This document shows, piece after piece, positions 5,530 to 63,360 of a stretch of 64,000 nt of DNA. Under the pieces are notes generated by a model. It made no database searches and was not told the DNA's origin. It was given only the letters and a program-made list of their open reading frames with translations. Source of the DNA: Tubulanus polymorphus (taxonomy: Eukaryota; Animalia; Nemertea); NCBI RefSeq assembly GCF_964204645.1, contig NC_134033.1, positions 10,982,655 to 11,046,654 on the forward strand, written 5' to 3'. Every line of letters begins with the position of its first letter. The first letter of the stretch is position 1. The position numbers were made by a program, and so were the translations under genes.

Positions 5530-5733
5530 GCTCATCCGACTTACTTCAACCCCGGTCTCCAAACTGCTGCATCATTCAATCCATACCTAACATCGGGCGT
5601 CGCCATGCCCGGCATCATGCAGACGCAGGACGGTTCACCGGTCCCGCAACACGCGGGTCAAATACAGACCCTACCGGTACAACAGGCTGGACCTACGGCT
5701 AAAACAACCGTACCTCGAGCTGATAGACTGGAG
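5530..5733 (+). CDS. mbl: Muscleblind linker exon AHPTYFNPGLQTAASFNPYL...VPRADRLE
   Basis: tatag|GCT and GAG|gtaagc; 204 nt; contains the MBNL-typical FNPYL and R(T/S/A)DRLE motifs that precede ZnF3. Confidence 0.93.
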
Positions 5734-9645: not shown

Positions 9646-9882
9646 GTTTGTCGAGAGTTTCAAAGAGGTAGTTGTACTCGTCAGCCTAGTGATTGTCGCT
9701 TTGCGCACCCCCCTGACCATGTACATGTGGACAACGGTGACAACCACGTCACCGTCTGCATGGATTTTATAAAGGGCAAATGTTCGAGAGACTCGTGTCG
9801 CTACTTCCATCCCCCTCCGCACCTCCAAGCTCAGATCAAAGCCACGCAACAACGTGCTACTCTCGCTGCTCAACAAGCCATG
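9646..9882 (+). CDS. mbl: Muscleblind tandem CCCH ZnF3-4 exon: [23 protein letters not shown]...[32 protein letters not shown]...AM
   Basis: ttag|GTT and ATG|gtaggg; 237 nt; Cx7Cx6Cx3H plus Cx7Cx4Cx3H spacing and HPPxHLQAxIKA are diagnostic for the MBNL second finger pair. Confidence 0.97.
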
Positions 9883-10055
9883 GTAGGGTAAACAACAACA
9901 GCAACCACGTAACGTTCAGACGTAAAACTATAATGGGATTTGAGATGAGGTCAGTCCGAGTCTGTCTGCTGCGGTGCTCTTCCTATTCTAAATCTTTACA
10001 TTTCAACTTCCATTTTTGGACAAAAATCTGTTCATACAGGTATGAATTAACAGCG

Positions 10056-10315
10056 TGGAACCACCAGCACCCCTCTCAAATACATTCGTAATCCCCCTGC
10101 GGTAGCGTCAGTCCGGAACCACCAGCACCTCTCCGTGGTAGCATCAGTCTGACCACCAGCATCCCCTCTGCGGTAGCGGCAGCCTGGTACCACCAGCACC
10201 CCTCCGCGGTAGCGTCAGCCTGGAACCACCAACACCCCTCCGTGGTAGCATCAGTCTGACCACCAGCACCCCTCTCAAATACATTCATAATTTTCCGCGG
10301 TAGCGTCAGTCTGAA
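10056..10315. repeat. Degenerate ~34-37-bp minisatellite (accaccagcaccc...ggtagcgtcagtc)
   Basis: About 7 degenerate copies. Confidence 0.85.
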
Positions 10316-16500: not shown

Positions 16501-18922
16501 GATTATTATTCATGCCATTGTCATTACCATTACAATTTTACATGTCCTAACCAATCAGCTTCTTGAGTCGTATATAAATATTAAACTAGCTTATTTTTGG
16601 GCACCGGCCTCAGTTTTTTTAATAAAATAGTTCCGACGTGTGTTTTCCTTGCATGTGGATTGTTGAACTGGTGAATGTAACAAACAATGATGAACTCATT
16701 GCCGATGTCAACCCCTCGTAACATCACTCCAACTAGTTCTGGTTAAAGCACATACAATGTATTTGCTGATAAAGAACAAATGTAGGCGATTTTGTTTTTG
16801 AAGCTGATCTGGTGAAAGAGATTTTAAAAGTTACCAATTACCAAATGCACCGTCCTTCCCAGTTAGGTCACGCTATTAGCATTACCGTTTCCATGTCCCT
16901 CCTTACAAGTTACAATTTTTAGTGTGGCCATTCGAAAATTACTTTAGCAACTAAGACAACCTTGAGTATTATAATTTTCTCTCATCATAAGAAATGGATG
17001 AAACATTCAAACCAAACTCTACAACCATCATAGGTTTACCATCATTACTGGCTTCATTTTTAATGTAGTTCTCGAATGCAACTTCCCTATCTTCAGTCAC
17101 TATACACTACTACCTTTGCCACCTCAATCCTGCCTCTTAACAACTTTCCAAACGTTTACTACGTATCTTACCTCTGCCTCTTACAGCCTCTAGGACTTCA
17201 TAATAGCCCTCGCAAATGCGCTCACCGATAATTCAAGTCGATGTTTCATCATTTGTGTTATAATCTGTAAACTGCTATGACGGCCCTTCTCTCGTTTATG
17301 AAATAACTGTCAAACTTTGCAGCATGAATATCATTGAAAAAATTTGAATCATTATTTCTATTGTTATTATCATGATTATTATAATTATTATTATTATCAT
17401 TAGTCGTATAGCCAGGCGCTGGTATCAGTAATCGTATATACCTCACTACCACTTCTATTTCCTTTCTTACAGCAACGTTTCTAAAATATCTTCCTAATTA
17501 CCAAATTAATAGATATCATTCGTTGCTTTGTCGAGGGCCTAGTTTTCTGCATTTTCAACCGATATTTCATTCACAAAATCATTTTTTCAAAAATTTTGGC
17601 ATCTAATTTTTAACTTACAATTTGTGGAAGTCTTTTCAACTGTTTGTATCTCGGTGCACGAATAATTGGTTGAATTTGTTTTTAAAGATGGCTGCTATGG
17701 CAACTCGCACATTCGTCTAGTCTAGTCCACGATCGTTCGATTTGGACGCAGCGCCATTTTCACGTTTGAAACCATTAAAACAGCAATAGATTTTACTTTT
17801 TCAAATATCGAAGAAGATTTATTCAACTGCTTGAATGGGTTAATTTTCATTCGGCAAATTTTTTAGAGTGTGAGACAAGTTCAAATTCATCTCATTGTCT
17901 ATAGTAGTTGTACTGTGCCTGTTATGCTCATCAAAATCTGTCTGCCTAAATTTTTAAAAAACCCATTGAACAATACGACTAAATCAATTTTTCATCGAGA
18001 ACTATTCGCTTATCTTGCATTGTGTATTACCACCATTATAATTATGATTATTATTATCATTATTGTTATTATTATTATTGATATTCGATTTTAGTGTTTG
18101 TAGTCTATATATATGATGGCTTTCCATGTGACGCTATTGCATTCTAGATATACGTTTGTGTAGGCATATTCTTGAACCCTGTCAGCGATAACATTACCTA
18201 CTATTTTTCTTCCGGCAAGAAATCCACCAATTTTTCTATTAAGAAAAAAAATCTCAGCCGTCATTCATAATTTCTCGCCTAATTTCCAAATTTATAATTT
18301 GTAATTTGTAACTCAAAATTTTATCGAAATTTACTCCATATTGAAATTACATTCTACCACATTCTTTTGGTTTTTTACTTCAAAATCTGATTTGGAATTT
18401 ATAACCGACCTCATGGCATAGATAGATAAGCAGAATAAACGACAGTACTGCTATCAACACTGAAGATGGGTCTCTTTCTGAGATAGAACTTTTGCCGAAT
18501 GGACATATATATATGTATATATATTGCCCTGTCTACACTAGAGAGTGAATATGGATTTAGAGTATTTTATACTAATGAAACTGAGGACTCGATCAATCCA
18601 CATTCATTTAATCCACAAGACCACCTAGTCTCAATCAGTCCTAGAGTAAATAGGAACATCTTGCTTGCCCATATATGTTAATGTATGTACTGGTGCATTG
18701 CAGAGGCGTCTCGTGTAGACATAAATTCATTCTGAATTTCGTTTGAATGAATTATGCTTGAAAAATCTTCCAAAATCTCTAGTATAGATATGCGGCATTT
18801 GTATCTCGATGCGATATGAAAACTACCGTAATTTCACCCTCTATTTTCTGTTTAACAAACAAACGAACGATCAAAATAGAAATAAAATATCTACTGACTG
18901 GAAACCAAAATTATGCATGTAG

Positions 18923-19067
18923 ATCTGTTACAACTACTTATTAATATTGGTGCTTTTCTTTTTATTTTTTATTTCCCACGATGCATTGCTGCTTGCTGTT
19001 GTCATGTGCCGCCAACCCTGCCATGCTATTGGCCAATTGCGATCATGTGCTCTGCATAACTAATTAG
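18923..19067 (+). promoter_or_regulatory. AG-exclusion zone / distant branch point with ~9 YGCY (MBNL) motifs upstream of the NLS exon
   Basis: No AG between 18923 and 19065; TTAAT at 18941-18945 followed by a pyrimidine tract, then TGCT/TGCC/CGCC cluster. Confidence 0.8.
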
Positions 19068-19133
19068 CAGCCAGTGGTAGAGGTGTTGAAGGGCAAGAAG
19101 CGTACACTCGATCCTGCCGATGAAATCGTCCTG
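19068..19133 (+). CDS. mbl: Muscleblind NLS cassette exon QPVVEVLKGKKRTLDPADEIVL (counterpart of the vertebrate MBNL1 54-nt exon 5)
   Basis: taattag|CAG (NAGNAG alternative start 19071) and CTG|gtactat; 66/63 nt, phase 0-0; KKR basic motif between ZnF4 and the KRPA exon; 143-nt AG-free YGCY-rich zone upstream. Confidence 0.85.
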
Positions 19134-22100
19134 GTACTATTATATTCAAAAAACTATTCCCTTTGATAAAGGGGGAACTCATCGACTCCTGCACATTTCG
19201 ACCATTTTGCGCACATATTGTTCGTATACACGGGTGATCGGGTCGCTTTTAGAGTGTTTACTATCATCATTATCAGTATTATTTTCCCCCAAAAACTCCG
19301 TCATATCCTCGATGTGTCAACCTTCGCTTTCCTGCGCAGTGCAGAATACAGTTATAGATGCTTAATATTCTTTATGAAGAGATCTGAAATAGCATGAATG
19401 ATCTTCGTTCGGGCAATATGTGTCTGTTGATATAACCGCGAAACGAATTCGTTAAAAATGTCATTAGCGAATGGTTGATTTTTTCTCAATTTTTAGCGCC
19501 AGGACCCGACATCGAACAATTTGTCTTTTGCATGGGACACTACTTACGAACAATTGGCCAAACTGGAACAAAATGCACAGAAGTTTTTGAGTGCCTCTTT
19601 TTTGCTTCGAAAAGGACTCTGACGGGACACCCGGTGGGCGCCTATTCTAACAGAAATACTGAAATATGTATACCTCCGCGGTAACAGCAACCGGGCGTCT
19701 CCCATCAGTGTTCTTGCTTTTATATGCATGTTGCAAATTAGTAGATCGGACTCGCTTTTTAGGTAATTTTCGCACACAAGTCACATGACAAGCCTACTCT
19801 GTGCTTTGTACATTGGTTGATTTTTTCCCTCTTACATATATACGTATACATACATTGAAAAACTATTGTTGCTATGCAAAGCCAAGCATAACTATGTACT
19901 CTTTGTATCACACATGCGCGAATCATTGTTTTACATCTAATATATTTATATCATTATTATTATTATTTTGTGCTTGTAATTTTCCTTAGCACATATTGTC
20001 GATCTCCTTATATTGTCCGCTCTGTTGTCATGACAACACCACCGGTATTGCAGCTTGGCACGTGTCATTCTGGAAAAGAAGATAATCGAACAAAATGAAG
20101 AAAAATATGAAAAATCAGAAATGCCATTGCTCCTTTTGGTGTTTAAATTGATTATTTTCAGAAAATTTGAAATTCGAAACTACATCTCTCCCCAAAGTTA
20201 GTTAAAGTTAGATTATTATAGAAAATCTAAATTTGAAATTTCTTTTTGGAATTATGAACATTATCTTTATCATTATTCTTATTATTATTATTGTCATCAT
20301 TAATCCTGATTTTTTAGGTGAAATTTGAGATGAAATATTTGGATATGATGATTTTCAATGTCTTTCAATCTTCTATCCATTTCTGGTAATTCAAATGATA
20401 CCTGAGCATCCCCTTACTGGCATAATATTACAAATGTATACAAGATGAGAATGTTTGTCATGTGATTTATACCGAGTTGTTTTAAACAAAATGGTGGATT
20501 TGAGGAAAATGGTCAAAAGCATGATTTTATGGGCTTTCTATGTTTAGAACTTATTCGAAACTCCTCTTCGAAAAAAATTAACCTTCACGGTCTCTAAATG
20601 AGCTTGAAAAGTTCATTGTTTAAGGCGAAATGAAAATCGAGTCTTATCTATTTTACAAACATGTAAATATTCATCCTTGCTTTGCGTGGATTTGTCCCTG
20701 ATGGTCATCAATGCTGCTCTCTGTACCACAGTATCAAACACTGTAGACTCATCTAAGCAGGTCGGTATCACTTGAGAAAAATGTGTGGACACTATTATTG
20801 AGTTCGAACAGTTTATCATTGCCATTACAAACCATCTTGTTCTTGTGCTCCTTTGGCAGCTTTGCCACCATGAGATGTCTCATGTGTCCTGTTGTGTAAT
20901 CATTGACTCTGTGAGGATATCTCGTTCTACCAGTTCCACATCCTTGCCACTAGAAAATAACTCTTGACTTGTCACTCTGACCTCATGAGTTCATCAATAT
21001 CGTGCTCCGATGCTCGATTACCAACTACCAAGATAATTTAGAGTAGCAAATTGAAGAATGATCATGGCAGTGAACTGAATAAATTTGAAATATATTCAAA
21101 ACTTATTAATAATACAAGACATAACTCCACACATTTTCTGAAATTGATAACCCCAATTAAAAGCCATGTCTATTACTGGGCAGTATTTTACATTGTGTCT
21201 GAGAGTACCGCCTATTCATGTGGTCTAGTTCAAATCCGCTCAAAGTGAGGATACAGTTTATTCATATCTTATACCGCGTTATCAAACATTACTGTTACTA
21301 TATGGTTGTAATTGTATATATGTATTTTCTGGGTCAATTTTCTACATCAAAGAAGAAAATGATAATATTCACAACCAAATAAAATCAACGTGAAGTTTTT
21401 GCTTTTCTGAACGTGAAATGATGAATGTATATATGTTTTGAAAAAGGTACCGCTTACGAATTTATGCAAAATGCGAAAATAATTTGCTCAAATCTCATGG
21501 AATACGACGAAAACTTAGAATTTCTTCTTTTTTTTTTTTTTAATGCACTTTCTAACCTGAGAATCTACTTGCAATTAAAAGTTGAATTCTGGCATCTTGT
21601 TGGCTTCAATTCTATGACAGATCTGATGATCCTAATCTTGAATGTGCATCGAACCTGGACAAAATGTTTAGATTTGCTTTCTCTACTTTATCGCACTGTA
21701 TATGTAAATATATATATATACATATGAATATATATATATCGATATATTGATAAATATATTTATATATATTTATGTATATGTATATTGATATATATTTTTG
21801 AAAAGTTAATGAGTCTAATAATTTGCATGTTCATGGATATTATTGTTATAATTATAATTACTACTATTAATTATCGATCAGAGCACTTTAATTAGATTAT
21901 TATCATTATTATTATTATTATCATTATTAATAATGCTTTCATTGTTGTGTAGATGCTTCAAAAAAAAATTAAACAAATTTTTTCTAAATATTTTGGAATT
22001 GTGCGACCTAACTTAAATTCTGAAAGTGCCCCATCGCAGCCCAGCAAGACAACATATTAATAGGATTTAGGGGAAATTTTGTAAATTGCTTTTCCCTCTC

Positions 22101-22789
22101 ATGGCGGCAATTTGGATCGTGACAAAAATGGAGATAAAATTCTGTCCGTTAGAAAATGTCCAATTAACTTTAGAATCATCACGATATTAATTCAGCCGAT
22201 ATGAATAATGATATTCCTGTTAAGATTATTATCGTAATGATAAAAACGAAATATTCTTTCTCGTGAACGACTATAATGTAATCTATTCTGGTGTATGTCG
22301 AGAATTCATGAATGTTCATATTTTTAATCTGCAAAATTCTAGTAGTCAGTAGAAATTTGGGTCGCCCGCTGAAAGAATGGAACTACAAATTTTATAAGCC
22401 GATGTGCCAATTATTTTTGTCAACAATACGAAAGATGGGTAGATTTTTTGTTTTTTTTTTTTGTATGTCGAGTGTTGATAATTCTACTAAATCAACTGGT
22501 TTTGAGCTAAAAATCAAATGGAATCTGTACATAGCTTTCCAGTGTTTCAAAGCATTTTTGATTTGTCGAAACATTTCTGAACTTGATAAAGAATTTGTCC
22601 TTTGTTGAGACAACACAAAGCTTTATCAAATATGACATTTACAAGGTATTCAAAAACTGATCAAACGTGATGATTTTGTCTTGAAATTGTGCTGCTGACT
22701 GTAAAATACATTCTCTATGTAGTCTGTGTGGACGGTGGTTCAGTTTCATTTTGAACTACTCATGCCAAGGCAGACCAGGCCTTTAAACT

Positions 22790-22970
22790 GGTCGGGTGGT
22801 TTGGGGAGAATAAACCAGTCAGGGCTGCAGAGTCGGGTGGTTTGGGGAGAATAAACCAGTCAGGGCCACAGAGTCGGGTGGTTTGGGGAGAATAAACCAG
22901 TCAGGGCCGCAGAGTCGGGTGGTTTGGGGAGAATAAACCAGTCAGGGCCGTGGAGTTGGGTGGTTTGAGA
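22790..22970. repeat. 41-bp minisatellite (agtcgggtggtttggggagaataaaccagtcagggc..), ~4.4 copies
   Basis: Period 41 measured from 22831 to 22872. Confidence 0.9.
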
Positions 22971-25665: not shown

Positions 25666-25831
25666 GGAATGACTGGAATGCCAGGAATGGTACCGATGAT
25701 GAAACGGCCAGCAGTAGCGGATGCAAAGAGTGGTCTACCAGTTTACCAACCGGCGTCTAACGTCGCCGCCTATCAACAAGCGTTAGCCGTTGCGCAATTG
25801 CAACAAGGGCAAGGATATGTACCGGTCTCGT
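25666..25831 (+). CDS. mbl: Muscleblind exon GMTGMPGMVPMMKRPAVADAKSGLPVYQP...GYVPVS (ends phase 1)
   Basis: attag|GGA and T|gtaagt; 166 nt; KRPA motif and YQQALA motif typical of MBNL C-terminal region. Confidence 0.92.
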
Positions 25832-26833
25832 GTAAGTAGTGTGAAAGTATTGTGGGAATCAATAACGAGGGAGGCGGGTTTAATTCGACTTAAAATCAGG
25901 CTTCAAAGTTGTAGGTTTATTGCGATTCCTGCTCCAAACCAAATTTTTCTTTCTCCATCTGGTTTGCGGGATGCCCTTTTTTGTTTCAAAGATGAAAATC
26001 ATTTGCTGCACTTATTGACTGTTTGATGTTTACTTGTAAGGAGTGGAAACATTGTTTCAGTGTTTATAAGTTCTGTTCTTCAAAGACTGGCAGTTATTAT
26101 TAGCTCACAAAAATCTATCGTGGTTTTTGTAGATGCATTTATACAGAGCTACGAGTTTTTACTTATGTCATCTAAGACAAGTCTATCTATATAATCATCG
26201 GTATCATTTAATTCGTTATAATTCATGCACTTTTGAAGTCACGCTAAGAGCCTTTGAAAGTCTTTGAAAGTTGCAACATGAACTAAGAAGATAAAGGCAA
26301 TAGATCGGTTTTTACGTTAGTCTGAAATAAGGTTATATGTACCCTTCTAGTACGCGACATCGAATACACCACATTCCTATCTACCGTGGTCTATTCAGAT
26401 ACTATTCTTAGGTAAATTGATTATGAAATATCGCTCGGAGAGTTTTAATAGTCTTTGATGCTACAAACATTGATAAGTTCATTTTCTGCGCGGCACATTG
26501 TAAAAAATTTGGTGTAGTTAACGTTTATCACATTAGCAGAACTTTTCTCTCTGCAATGCTACACGTTTGATTACATTCTCTTCCGCTGTCGCAAAATAAC
26601 ACTGGCGACATTTGTTTAATTCATCAACTTTTCCACATTCTTAATGAATAGAATAAATATAGGTAGGTGATATAGGTGTTTATGTAGAGATGTTGTCGAT
26701 TTTAGAATTACGTGAAACGTATTGATATTTCATCTGGTTATTAGTATTTCATCTGGCCCTAGAAATTCCAAGAACTAATTGATATGTCTCATGAAAGTCT
26801 AGATGATAGGATCTAAGTTGATCACTAAAAATG

Positions 26834-27118
26834 CTAGCCCATGGTGATGCAGGGCTAGCCTATGGCAGATACGTTATTCAGCTAGCCCATGGTGATGCGG
26901 GGCTAGCCTATGGCAGATTCATTACTCAGTTAGCCCTTAGTGATGCAGAGCTAGCCCATGGTGATGCAGAGCTAGTCTATGGCAGATACGTTACTCAGCT
27001 AGCCCATCATGGTGCAGAGCTAGCCCATCGTGATGCAGAGCTAGCCCATCGTATGCAGAGCTAGCCTCTGTTGATGTAGAGCTAACCCATTGCGATACAG
27101 AGCTAGCCCATGGTGATG
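26834..27118. repeat. 21-bp-based minisatellite (gctagcccatggtgatgcaga)
   Basis: About 12 degenerate units; gives the spurious LAHGDAE ORF. Confidence 0.9.
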
Positions 27119-29792: not shown

Positions 29793-30083
29793 TTATGGAC
29801 GTAAAACTGATGGCTGAAATTAATGTTTATGCTCTGTGTTTTTTCTCTTTCATAAACTCACAAAAATCGCACACCTATAAAACACTCGCGTGTGTGTGTG
29901 TGTTCACTGCTTGTCTCTACCTACCACATATACCACTGCATGCAACGCCTCCTAACACTATTCGCTCGCCACTGCTGCTTTCTCGACCACTACCAAAATA
30001 CTCGGGGTGCACCGACTGACCTCACTTGCCTGTGCTTGCTGCCGTTTTGCACACATACCGCGCAACACCACGCACACCAACAG
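29793..30083 (+). promoter_or_regulatory. 289-nt AG-exclusion zone with ~11 YGCY motifs and a TGCATG upstream of the frame-switch exon
   Basis: No AG between 29793 and 30081; candidate branch points TTAAT (~29820), CTAAC (~29952), CTGAC (~30016). Confidence 0.75.
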
Positions 30084-30199
30084 ACCCCACGACTGCCACC
30101 GCCTTGCTTTCGGGACAGACTTCACCGGTAACTGGTAGCACGGTTCAGCTTACCCACCATCACAATGCTAGCGTCCAATATTTTGACGAAAAAAGTCAG
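30084..30199 (+). CDS. mbl: Muscleblind frame-switch cassette exon (Y)PTTATALLSGQ...VQYFDEKSQ, phase 1 to 0; alternative donor ends exon at 30205 (+VQ)
   Basis: First AG after a 289-nt AG-free zone; open in the incoming phase-1 frame; donors CAG|gtacag (30200) and CAG|gtatcg (30206); 116 or 122 nt puts exon 32939 into the zinc-finger frame. Confidence 0.8.
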
Positions 30200-32938: not shown

Positions 32939-33023
32939 TTACTGGACACCATCCCGGTGTGCCGCGATTTTAAGGCTGGCCAGTGTTTGCGGCCACAATG
33001 CAAGTACGTTCACCTAGTTGAAG
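32939..33023 (+). CDS. mbl: Muscleblind dual-frame exon: phase 1 gives (F)TGHHPGVPRF* (TAA 32971-32973); phase 0 gives LLDTIPVCRDFKAGQCLRPQCKYVHLVE (CCCH finger)
   Basis: ttttctatag|TT and AAG|gtaagt; both frames give recognisable Muscleblind motifs. Confidence 0.92.
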
Positions 33024-33425
33024 GTAAGTGATTATTCTGGATAGATATGTTTACCTTAAGTTCTAAGGTTGATACATTTGTTTCTACGTCATTTTTGGTC
33101 TGAATTCTGAGGCCTGTAGCTTCTTAAAGGCTTGATGGGGGTATACTCTGGAAAGGGATCGTTCATGAAGGAACATATCAAGTAGATCTTTTGATGAATC
33201 AATTGTCAGGCAAACGCTGAAACTGTTGTGCATATTTATGATTATTGCAAGGTCATCCGTTTGTGTATTTGTTCATCACAGATGTTGATAATCGAAATTG
33301 TCAGATTGTGAAGCATTCGCATGCGCGATCATTGTGTCCCTGGATTCCCGGTTTTCCTAAAAAGAAAAATGTCGAACAAAAGGTTATGAGATAATTTTGA
33401 TAATAATGTTCTTTTCTTTCGGCAG

Positions 33426-33547
33426 ATTACGTTGAAGTTATGGATGGTAAAGTTACTGTGTGTCGCGATGCGGCTAAAGGAAAATGCACTCGACCGATGT
33501 GTAGATATTACCATATTCCTGCGGTAATGCCCCACATAATTCTGTGA
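33426..33547 (+). CDS. mbl: Muscleblind last coding exon (D)YVEVMDGKVTVCRDAAKGKCTRPMCRYYHIPAVMPHIIL* (CCCH finger)
   Basis: ttctttcggcag|AT, phase 1 matches the donor at 33024; Cx7Cx4Cx3H; TGA 33545-33547. Confidence 0.93.
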
Positions 33548-48127: not shown

Positions 48128-50009
48128 GTCGGCCAAGTATTTCCTCGAGTTGAGCTGCATTGACAATGATGTTCAGGGTCGGAACCATAGAAAAAGACAT
48201 TGGGGGAGGGGTGGGTTCTGAAAAGGTAAGTGCAACAAGTGCCGAAAAATAGAAGCCTTCAGACGCAATTTCCTGCTGATACATAGACGACTTGACTACA
48301 AACGATTAACGCGGCTAAATTACGATCAGTTTCGACTCTGATCGACGAAGAGATCTAAGAAATACAGTAAAACCCGTTAAAATCCGGATCGGCTTAATCC
48401 GGATTTTGGTCTAATCAAGACAATATTTTGCAGTCCTTCGATATACGAGAAAATGACTTATTTAATCAGGATTTCCCTTTAACGAGATAAATTTTCAGGT
48501 CCCAAGAGGAATGGACATGTTGAGCTAATTGGCAATACGGACCTGCGTGCATATTTTGGTAACTTTGTTTATCGAGTGCTCAATGTTAACTGCGCCTCCT
48601 GTGATATTAGAATAGATAGGTGTTCTCTATATAGAACTGCGCGTTTCGAAATGAAATATTAACAACAGCGCCTAAGAGTTCTAAGTTTTTCGTTTCTGAC
48701 GTAGAGAGGTGAAATTATCGTTTTTCGATAAAACACTTAACGGTACATATAACGTATTTCATATCGCCCATGTATATAAGCACCTGTCGCTTCCGTTCAA
48801 TCGTTATACTAAACCAGGGCAAAGTGCGCGCTGCCTCGTGATATATAACTCGGGTTTAGATAAAGCGTCAATTCTGTACGGAATCACGTCTCGGGATAGA
48901 TGGGGAAAGTCTGGAAGTCTAGGCTGGGGTTATTCCTGCTATTACTAATTTGACTCATACAGGTCGCACGCCCGAAAACGTGAGGGCGTTTACAGGTTTG
49001 GGAAATGTATGAAAAACCTCCAGCAAAATTCCTGCGAATTCCAGCAATTTCGTCATCGAAAGTGATTCACAAATGTAGAATTTTCTAACATTCCATTTAT
49101 ACGTATAAAATACCAATCTAGAATAACATACATTTAAACATTTTGGACAAAACATTTTCTTTTCATTTTCAAATGAAAACCCGTTTGTCATTTTATACGA
49201 ATGAATTTATCGCGTCATTTATTCTCAGCACATTCCGATTGAATGTGGGTGTCTCGAGGACTATCTTGTGTTTATGCTCGAATCGAAATGAAAAGTCTAA
49301 AACAAATCATTTTTGTAATATAACAGGAAGACTTCCTTAGCATTATTTATTTTACAGTTTTTCAACGCTACAAATTTCAAGATATACGCTTCATTTTAAA
49401 CATATTAGGATGATTAAGCAGTGCTTAAAAACGCTCAAAATGCTTGGAAATTAGGACTAATTTTCTGGGGGGGGGGGGGGGGTGACCAGGTAATGTTTGT
49501 TTGTTTTTTGGACCATAGCCAAACGAACTCGCCACAACAACATGCACCGAACCCGGTTCATGGTTTATGGGCCCGTTATTCATATTTGAATCTAAATTCC
49601 GGTTAATTAGTTCACTTTAAACATTTTAACTATTTAACGGATTCCACATTCCAATAAAGCAAAATACACTAAAATGCGTACTGTACTCCTTAATGGAAAA
49701 TCACTAGGGATTGTCAATTACTAGTTTAGGAACCCGCTGCTAGTGATTCTAAATTGCACTCTCTCCAGTGAAAGGCGAAAATGTCATCTACGTAGAACAG
49801 GCCCGTAGCGTGGGAGGAGGGGGATGGTTTGGTAAAAGGGGGTTACGCAGAACCGCCCAAAATCCGAAAGTTGTCCGCTTTTGAAAAATGAACTTGTAAC
49901 ACTTCCGCTTGCTGGCCTCCTCGGTCGCTGGGAGTATAGAGACGCTAATAGAGAGAGCAGGCGTCTATGCATTATTTAAAAACACATTTACACATTCAAT
50001 TTTTTCAAA

Positions 50010-50223
<214 letters not shown>

Positions 50224-50446
50224 TATGTAAATTATTCTTTAGATATTTCTAACAGGTTTCACGACTGCGAATGACAGCTAAAGAGTCGTCCCTTTAGAAA
50301 ATCATAAACCAGTTTTCGTTTTTAATTCGATAGTTTTTAGTATCTGCCGCGTGTTCGCGACTACCTATGATTATAATAGAATATATAGGTCTATACACAT
50401 TTTTACTCATATATTAACATAGATATACGAAGTGATTTCTGATAAA

Positions 50447-62673: not shown

Positions 62674-62968
62674 GTGAGTAAGAGACTTCGCGTTGAGAAT
62701 ATTCAAGCAGTAATAATTTCTGAGAGAGTGGTATTTCACTGATAGCAATGATTGTAGTGGATTGAGACTTATTTGAGCAGTATACCCCCCCCCCCCCCCC
62801 ACAGTCACAGTCACAGTGGGCGGCGACGTCTGAACAAACATGTTTTGGGAACATGGGGAAAGTCTGTCGGGGAGGGGGGAGGTTTACAGATGATGCAGGT
62901 TGATAGCTGCATACGTTATCTAACATTTTTAAAATTTTCAAACTCCATTCCTTCTTACCTCATTTTAG

Positions 62969-63278
62969 GTGCGTAGAATTGAAAACTCGATTCACCGATG
63001 AGTTGGTAGAAGAGGAGATATCACACATGGCACCGGAACTGTCTCAGTTCTCCGGCCAGCAGATTCAAATGTTCGTCATAACGGCCGTCGTCGATACGTC
63101 CGACTTCAGCGAGATATCGCTGGCTGAGGCGAAATCTCGCGGTATCGTCAACCAGAAAGCCGGCACGTTTTATAACGCCGAGAACGGCGAATCGATTTCG
63201 ATACAGGAGGCCATGTCACTCGGTTACATCGTGGTCGAACGAACAGTCGTGAAAAAAGAACGCGAAACCGAACGTAAA
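62969..63278 (+). CDS. Plakin-like exon with plectin repeat(s) FVITAVVDTSDFSEISLAEAKSRGIVNQKAGTFYNAENGESISIQEAMSLGYI; read-through stop at 63317
   Basis: cattttag|G; ISLxEAxxRGIV and GExISIxEAMxxGxI are plectin-repeat patterns; candidate donor AAA|gttcgt. Confidence 0.85.
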
Positions 63279-63360
63279 GTTCGTGCCGGAAGTCAAGAAG
63301 ATTTATTGACCCACTGAGTTTTTACTACAAGAAAGAGAAAATGGATTGATTTTTCTACAG

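What the first reader, a model, noticed from the sequence alone, without database searches (positions are those of the whole stretch)
18923..19140. Intronic element resembling the vertebrate MBNL1 exon-5 ultraconserved autoregulatory 3' splice site
Seen: a 143-nt AG-free zone with a distal branch/pyrimidine tract, ~9 YGCY motifs, a non-pyrimidine acceptor ctaattag, a KKR-bearing 66-nt exon and donor CTG|gtactat. Knowledge: human MBNL1 exon 5 encodes part of the NLS, uses a distant branch point with an AG-exclusion zone and is repressed by MBNL itself. From memory, the human intron has blocks like ctgcttgctgtt, ggcccattgccatcatgtgctc, ctaattaag and donor CTG|gtactat. This window has ctgcttgctgtt, ggccaattgcgatcatgtgctc, ctaattag and the same donor. 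If confirmed, this is nucleotide-level conservation of a non-coding splicing element across Bilateria.
Basis: partly seen in the sequence, partly recalled or inferred. Interest (0 to 1): 0.9.

Follow-up and report, generated by a model that had tools for sequence, protein, structure and literature searches.

The report
Ancient muscleblind self-splicing control element
A 150-base piece of intron in this worm's muscleblind gene still lines up, letter by letter, with the stretch that vertebrate MBNL proteins bind to switch off their own nuclear-import exon, so this splicing feedback switch has kept its DNA sequence since the common ancestor of worms and fish.

Summary
Confirmed. The window holds a muscleblind gene, probably of a ribbon worm. 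18923-19133 is the intron end plus a 66-nt in-frame KR exon, between the ZnF3/4 exon and the second-KR exon, as vertebrate MBNL exon 5 is. I fetched orthologous loci by protein, not DNA, and used no human sequence. The intron alone aligns directly upstream of the same exon in Lineus (85%/138 nt), the hemichordate Ptychodera (75%/115 nt, E 2e-14), amphioxus (33/37), flounder mbnl1 (23/25 plus 20/24), arowana mbnl2, Limulus and Priapulus. It beats shuffles that keep YGCY motifs and the AG-free zone. A teleost-only profile finds it at E 5e-7. A second acceptor of the same design in this gene does not align. There is no conserved RNA fold. Also conserved: an Rbfox TGCATG near -150 and a branch-consensus/QKI motif overlapping the acceptor. 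A coral shares the exon and layout but not alignable sequence. Autoregulation and the pan-bilaterian KR cassette are published; I found no report of this nucleotide-level conservation. Not shown: exon inclusion in this species, branch position, Mbl dependence. The scan had not noted this element on other DNA.

The parts
18914..18919 (+). TGCATG Rbfox-type motif at -154, just upstream of the AG-free zone
   Evidence: Present at -132 to -161 in all 10 invertebrate loci including the coral, and at -185/-193 in teleosts; 1.8% of background AGs have it in that interval
18923..19065 (+). AG-exclusion zone, 143 nt
   Evidence: 127-179 nt in all 13 orthologous sites examined
18941..18945 (+). Candidate distal branch site YTNAY, A at 18944 (-124); alternative A at 18940
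   Evidence: Motif only; inferred by analogy with the mapped mammalian -141 branch (PMC7901844); not mapped here
18955..18974 (+). Distal U-rich pyrimidine tract (18 of 20 pyrimidines)
   Evidence: same position (-104 to -141) in all orthologues
18971..18998 (+). Conserved block A ending in the overlapping YGCY cluster TGCTGCTTGCTG
   Evidence: 20-26 of 28 identical in Lineus, Limulus, Priapulus, Ptychodera, amphioxus and both teleosts
18999..19027 (+). Variable YGCY-bearing spacer (four YGCY); by position it matches the region holding the key mammalian MBNL1 site
   Evidence: Alignment; PMC5082313 for the central site; correspondence inferred
19028..19052 (+). Conserved block B (25 nt), mostly not made of YGCY
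   Evidence: 25/25 Lineus, 23/25 flounder mbnl1, 22/25 arowana mbnl2 and Ptychodera, 21/25 amphioxus, 17/25 Limulus, lost in Priapulus
19053..19067 (+). Block C: weak acceptor with a branch-consensus / QKI-SF1 type ACTAAT (19059-19064, A at -5) overlapping it; AG at 19066-67
   Evidence: CTRAY with its A at -4 to -6 in 10 of 12 loci, -12 in amphioxus, absent in arowana mbnl2; background 1.2%
19068..19133 (+). 66-nt phase-0 cassette exon carrying the first KR half of the bipartite NLS (KKR codons 19095-19103)
   Evidence: Versus Lineus 12 of 18 differences at third codon positions; RefSeq isoforms with and without the exon in Lineus, Ptychodera, amphioxus, oysters, corals; inclusion in this species not shown
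19134..19140 (+). Donor GTACTAT after CTG
   Evidence: CTG|GTA[CT] in every orthologue including the coral
9646..9882 (+). Upstream exon, ZnF3/4 tandem CCCH pair, ends in phase 0 (ATG|GTAGGG)
25666..25831 (+). Downstream exon with the second KR (..PMMKRPAVAD..), starts in phase 0

Best explanation
This is the orthologue of the vertebrate MBNL1/MBNL2 exon-5 intronic silencer, inherited from the bilaterian ancestor with its linear sequence partly intact. The branch point and pyrimidine tract lie about 110-125 nt upstream of a weak acceptor; the AG-free stretch between them lets the distal branch pair with the first AG and leaves room for nine YGCY sites. When nuclear Mbl is low the 66-nt exon is included, both KR motifs are present and Mbl is nuclear. 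When Mbl rises it binds the YGCY sites, the exon is skipped in frame, and a more cytoplasmic isoform is made: a negative feedback loop. Rbfox (TGCATG) and a STAR protein or SF1 (ACTAAT at the acceptor) probably tune it. Shown: sequence, gene position, homology, frame, two isoforms annotated in relatives. Inferred: branch position, Mbl binding and repression, localisation, co-regulators.
For: Gene context identical to vertebrates. Intron-only blastn: best hit of each whole-gene locus sits right before the KR exon. Smith-Waterman versus flounder 45, arowana 40, amphioxus 53, Ptychodera 87; z 4-13 against shuffles that keep YGCY, T-runs and AG absence; none of 725-1500 other AG-upstream 150-mers per locus reaches these scores. 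Teleost-only profile hits window 18975-19055 at E 5e-7 in 278 kb; protostome-only profile hits all four deuterostome sites. A second acceptor of the same design in the gene scores only 18-32 against it. YGCY 8-11 versus antisense RGCR 0-1 in every locus, AG 0 versus CT 10-15: constraint is on the RNA strand. An intron-only pattern pulled four animal contigs from metagenomes, each followed by the KR exon. Mechanism shown in mammals (PMC7901844, PMC5082313) and C. elegans, including FOX-1 co-repression (PMC10773944).
Against: No RNA evidence for the exon in this species: the run holding the ZnF exon has no contig on the KR exon (compatible with skipping, low level or filtering). Block B, the best-conserved part, is mostly not YGCY, so Mbl binding alone does not explain the conservation. 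The window lacks the downstream GCATG kept in 9 of 12 loci. Branch point predicted from motif only.
Confidence: 0.8

Rival explanations
1. The element is homologous, but its sequence is held mainly by other factors: a decoy branch site or QKI/How-SF1 competition at the ACTAAT overlapping the acceptor, Rbfox upstream, and an unknown protein on block B. Mbl would be a minor or vertebrate/nematode-specific input.
For: CTRAY at -4 to -6 is kept from coral to flounder, too close to the AG for a normal branch (distance argument from own knowledge). QKI represses exons by competing with SF1 for ACUAA (PMC13004596). Block B is the most conserved part.
Against: YGCY count and strand bias are conserved even in the coral where sequence is not; Mbl repression is proven in mammals and nematodes; arowana mbnl2 has lost the CTRAY yet keeps blocks A and B.
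Confidence: 0.12
2. The blocks pair with each other to form a conserved RNA stem that brings the distal branch close to the acceptor or hides the AG.
For: In deuterostomes CATGATG in block A can pair with CATCATG in block B and appears in the minimum-energy folds of flounder, arowana and Ptychodera.
Against: No sequence folds better than its shuffles (z from -0.6 to +1.75); consensus fold -1.08 kcal/mol with no compensatory pair; that stem is broken in the window and Lineus; mammalian probing finds the region largely unstructured (PMC5082313).
Confidence: 0.04
3. Convergence: independent YGCY-rich, AG-free acceptors look alike because they share a motif grammar.
For: Low-complexity motifs contribute to the score; the coral site (33) scores no better than same-design controls (29-32); direct window-teleost scores are modest (40-45).
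Against: Architecture-preserving nulls are exceeded (z 4.2-13.3; z 6-18 against four protostomes); 23/25 identity in a mostly non-YGCY block; three collinear blocks at the same distances; graded bridge through amphioxus and hemichordate; the second acceptor of the same design does not align across lineages.
Confidence: 0.02
4. A DNA-level enhancer (overlapping CCAAT boxes in ATTGGCCAAT) that happens to lie beside the exon.
For: Bilaterian-conserved enhancers often carry CCAAT boxes (PMC10735318); ATTGG is kept in the window, Lineus, Ptychodera and both teleosts.
Against: Neither ATTGG nor CCAAT in amphioxus, Priapulus or coral; strict sense-strand YGCY and AG bias; fixed distance to the acceptor.
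Confidence: 0.02

Closest known systems
Vertebrate MBNL1/MBNL2 exon 5 (54 nt) ultraconserved autoregulatory element (PMC7901844, PMC5082313; Gates et al. 2011 cited there)
   Same: Same gene position, in-frame KR exon, long AG-free zone, distal pyrimidine tract, YGCY cluster, weak acceptor, donor CTG|GTACT, and three alignable intron blocks
   Different: Exon 66 nt and protein sequence nearly unalignable outside KR; predicted branch at -124 versus -141; TAG not AAG acceptor; host gene has a third zinc-finger pair; function untested here
C. elegans mbl-1 exon 7 autoregulation and pan-bilaterian KR cassette (PMC10773944)
   Same: Alternative first-KR exon next to a second-KR exon; upstream GCAUG Rbfox site; YGCY sites
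   Different: That paper aligned introns only among Caenorhabditis, found cross-phylum conservation almost limited to the KR residues, and listed Ambulacraria as lacking the double KR. Here the intron aligns across phyla, and the cassette is present in a hemichordate, sea stars and corals (second motif KK or RK there)
Bilaterian-conserved non-coding elements (Bicores, PMC3410860; the 25 segments of Frith and Ni, PMC10735318)
   Same: Non-coding, alignable between protostomes and vertebrates, fixed position and orientation in the orthologous gene
   Different: Those are promoters, enhancers, 3' UTRs and one mid-intron segment; neither paper mentions MBNL and Clarke et al. removed 150 nt around exons. 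This one is a splice-site regulatory element acting on RNA
QKI versus SF1 competition at ACUAA branch sites (PMC13004596)
   Same: ACUAAY motif upstream of a regulated exon
   Different: Here the motif is only 2-3 nt from the AG, so it is unlikely to be the working branch; no link to MBNL in that paper

Membership tests
MBNL exon-5 autoregulatory NLS cassette | Host gene is a muscleblind orthologue and the exon lies between the ZnF3/4 exon and the second-KR exon | tested here: met
MBNL exon-5 autoregulatory NLS cassette | Frame-preserving exon encoding the first KR | tested here: met
   66 nt, phase 0 on both sides, third-position bias versus Lineus
MBNL exon-5 autoregulatory NLS cassette | Long AG-free zone with distal pyrimidine tract and weak acceptor | tested here: met
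   143 nt; tract at -113; pyrimidine fraction 0.45 beside the AG
MBNL exon-5 autoregulatory NLS cassette | YGCY cluster between tract and acceptor, sense strand | tested here: met
   9 YGCY versus 0 antisense
MBNL exon-5 autoregulatory NLS cassette | Intron sequence homologous to vertebrate MBNL1/2 | tested here: met
   Teleost mbnl1 and mbnl2; human not used
MBNL exon-5 autoregulatory NLS cassette | Exon is alternatively spliced in this species | tested here: inconclusive
   No RNA contig on the exon; both isoforms annotated in Lineus and other relatives
MBNL exon-5 autoregulatory NLS cassette | Far-distal branch point is used | not testable with these tools
   Motif prediction only
MBNL exon-5 autoregulatory NLS cassette | Skipping depends on Mbl level; isoforms differ in localisation | not testable with these tools
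   Needs minigene or knock-down
Bilaterian-conserved non-coding element | Non-coding | tested here: met
   Frame-breaking indels of 1, 4 and 8 nt among orthologues; stop in the exon's frame just before the acceptor; no Rfam match
Bilaterian-conserved non-coding element | Significant protostome-vertebrate alignment at the syntenic position | tested here: met
Bilaterian-conserved non-coding element | Enhancer or promoter activity (as for Bicores) | not tested
   Strand bias argues for an RNA-level role
Ultraconserved element (strict definition) | At least 200 bp of 100% identity between compared genomes | tested here: not met
   81.6% over 207 nt to Lineus; the term applies to the mammalian orthologue only
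Conserved structured cis-regulatory RNA | Stable consensus fold with covariation | tested here: not met

The most novel reading that the evidence does not exclude
The MBNL exon-5 silencer is a splice-regulatory intron element alignable between vertebrates and protostomes that surveys of deep conservation missed. Its most conserved parts (block B and a branch-consensus motif overlapping the acceptor) are not MBNL sites and point to an undescribed second layer, such as a decoy branch site or a QKI/SF1 gate, also acting on vertebrate MBNL1. The cassette and its layout predate Bilateria (corals).
Probability: 0.45. Interest if true: 0.85.

Novelty: new member of a known kind. Interest (0 to 1): 0.72.

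Why it matters
Only a few dozen non-coding segments are known to align between vertebrates and protostomes, and the published lists I read are promoters, enhancers and UTRs. This one is a splicing silencer whose vertebrate copy has a known mechanism and matters in myotonic dystrophy, where exon-5 inclusion is a marker of free MBNL. In mammals the element is 100% conserved, so comparison cannot say which bases matter. The cross-phylum alignment does: it picks out about 60 nt in three blocks, plus an Rbfox site, and shows that much of the constraint lies outside the YGCY motifs and is not structural. That gives direct mutational targets for the open question of why such elements are ultraconserved. 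At DNA level the element is better conserved than the zinc-finger exon of the same gene (81.6% versus 78% to Lineus, 75% versus 66% to Ptychodera).

Tried and rejected
Rfam scan of the window: no family. Single-sequence folding and RNAalifold: no structure, no covariation. A coding reading of the intron: a chance protein match to a Lineus segment belongs to a separate Lineus exon at L032:55906, and indels break frame. Coral sequence homology: local z about 3, global z about 1, no nhmmer hit, controls score alike, so only layout is claimed. Metagenome pattern scan: 23 of 27 hits were chance; the four true ones were selected by DNA pattern, so the verdict does not rest on their scores, though two helped build the protostome profile. 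Lamprey locus too long to fetch, Owenia not on record; no insect, nematode or named mollusc intron obtained. Reads: no RNA-labelled run; DNA-like contigs confirm the genomic sequence with one difference; exon use undecided. Gates 2011, Kino 2015 and Maeso 2013 were not read (Gates and Maeso not held), so a figure there could pre-empt part of the novelty.

Full report
Observation. All described features are at the stated places: no AG from 18923 to 19065, nine YGCY, a weak acceptor at 19066-67, a 66-nt open exon with KKR, and the donor CTG|GTACTAT. Neither the AG gap (11 of 3102 as long) nor the YGCY density is unusual alone; together they mark three AGs in 64 kb. DNA-like contigs from a public run cover 18456-19771 with one difference, so this is not an assembly artefact.

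Host gene. The + strand carries a muscleblind gene: a linker exon ending ..RADRLE at 5733, the ZnF3/4 exon 9646-9882, this exon, the second-KR exon 25666-25831 and 3' exons for a further zinc-finger pair. Both flanks are phase 0, so skipping keeps the frame. The closest orthologue obtained is the nemertean Lineus longissimus. An earlier scan note names the genome as Tubulanus polymorphus, which fits but was not verified. Exon differences from Lineus fall mostly on third codon positions (12 of 18). RefSeq lists isoforms with and without this exon in Lineus, Ptychodera, amphioxus, oysters, scallop, abalone and corals.

Homology test. I fetched orthologous gene loci through their proteins, so DNA similarity played no part in choosing them: Lineus, Limulus, Priapulus, Ptychodera, Branchiostoma floridae, flounder mbnl1, arowana mbnl2 and the coral Stylophora. 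No human contig was used. With the intron alone as query, the best hit in each bilaterian locus lies immediately before the KR exon: Lineus 85.5% over 138 nt, Ptychodera 74.8% over 115 nt (E 2e-14), amphioxus 33/37 (E 1e-7), Limulus E 9e-8, Priapulus E 3e-5, flounder 23/25 (E 2e-5) with a second collinear 20/24, arowana 22/25. Three blocks recur in order at the same distances. Scores exceed dinucleotide and 4-let shuffles, and shuffles that fix YGCY, T-runs and AG absence (flounder z 7.7, 7.3, 6.1; arowana 6.7, 5.2, 4.2; amphioxus 11, 8.5, 7.5; Ptychodera 21, 18, 13; Priapulus only 2.4 on the strictest null). No other AG-upstream 150-mer sampled from the same loci reaches them. A profile built from the two teleost introns alone finds the window (E 5e-7) and Lineus (E 9e-7) in 278 kb; a protostome-only profile finds all four deuterostome sites. 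The gene supplies its own control: a second AG-free, YGCY-rich acceptor (window 30083 and counterparts in Lineus, amphioxus, Ptychodera) scores 18-32 against the element and 18-33 among its own counterparts. Shared design alone therefore does not give this alignment. Limulus and Priapulus link to teleosts only through the window-type sequence. An intron-only pattern also retrieved four animal contigs from metagenomes, each followed by the KR exon.

What is conserved. In all loci: AG-free zone 127-179 nt, 8-13 YGCY with almost none on the other strand, distal U-tract, donor CTG|GTA[CT]. First, TGCATG sits at -132 to -161 in every invertebrate (background 1.8%), matching the FOX-1 site that represses the nematode exon (PMC10773944). 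Second, a branch-consensus CTRAY has its A only 4-6 nt from the junction in 10 of 12 loci (background 1.2%); in invertebrate bilaterians it is the ACTAAT recognised by SF1 and QKI (PMC13004596). It is too close to the AG to be a normal branch (own knowledge), so a decoy or blocking role is my inference. No RNA structure is supported, in line with mammalian probing (PMC5082313).

Coral. Stylophora has a 45-nt RKR exon at the same place, annotated as optional in three hexacoral genera, with a 127-nt AG-free zone, nine YGCY, TGCATG at -159, CTGAC at -6 and the same donor. Sequence similarity is not separable from same-design controls. The layout probably predates Bilateria; sequence homology is not claimed.

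Mechanism. Most likely the negative feedback known from mammals (branch at -141, 90-nt YGCY region, skipping at high MBNL1, loss of part of the NLS; PMC7901844, PMC5082313) and C. elegans (PMC10773944). Here the branch is predicted at 18944 (-124). Shown are sequence, position, homology and frame. Inferred are branch use, Mbl binding, skipping and localisation. Reads could not decide inclusion: no run is on record as RNA, and the run holding the whole ZnF exon has no contig on the KR exon, which fits skipping, rarity or filtering.

Novelty. The loop and the pan-bilaterian KR cassette are known. Verbeeren et al. report cross-phylum conservation as almost limited to the KR residues and align introns only within Caenorhabditis. 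Frith and Ni and Clarke et al. do not mention MBNL, and Clarke et al. excluded exon flanks. A vertebrate survey lists one MBNL1/MBNL2 paralogous element, without saying in the main text which, and found little amphioxus similarity overall. Ten paper searches found no report of the cross-phylum intron alignment, but subscription papers and figures were not visible. Verdict: a real, orthologous member of a known system, with an apparently unreported and unusual depth of non-coding conservation and two testable new motifs. Interest 0.72.

Noticed in passing
window 29793-30199: Second AG-free zone (289 nt, longest in the window) with YGCY cluster before an optional exon; same design at Lineus L032:75856, amphioxus L035:97724, Ptychodera L031:12070, but sequence does not align across lineages. 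Already noted by the scan.
   Followed up: partly
window 32940-33025 and 33427-33547: Exon readable in two frames: short tail ..TGHHPGVPRF* or start of a third zinc-finger pair LLDTIPVCRDF.. Already noted by the scan.
   Followed up: partly
L034:10594-10770 (Stylophora); proteins P0005, P0316-P0326: Optional 15-aa KR exon with the same intron layout in corals and Exaiptasia, beyond the bilaterian range published.
   Followed up: partly
L031:9072-9251 (Ptychodera); P0043, P0242, P0301 (sea stars): Ambulacrarians have the cassette; only the second motif is KK instead of KR, which may explain why they were listed as lacking it.
   Followed up: partly
L035:94555-94569 (amphioxus): The ancestral acceptor AG has become AC and the next AG, 7 nt further, is used, moving the ACTAAT motif to -12.
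   Followed up: no
window 19134-19215: The downstream GCATG (+17 to +29 in 9 of 12 loci) is absent in this species, Ptychodera and the coral.
   Followed up: no
L006:1184-1297, L007:2253-2354: Unidentified animal hosts in metagenomes carry a poly-alanine expansion inside the KR exon while the intron element stays intact.
   Followed up: no
window 62907-63317 (+): Open stretch resembling a plectin/plakin-repeat coding exon of a neighbouring gene (..IVNQKAGTFYNAENGESISIQEAMSLGYI..); resemblance from memory only.
   Followed up: no
window 10040-10300, 22723-22933, 26822-27061, 49961-50240: Short tandem-repeat arrays in introns and an (AT)n run.
   Followed up: no
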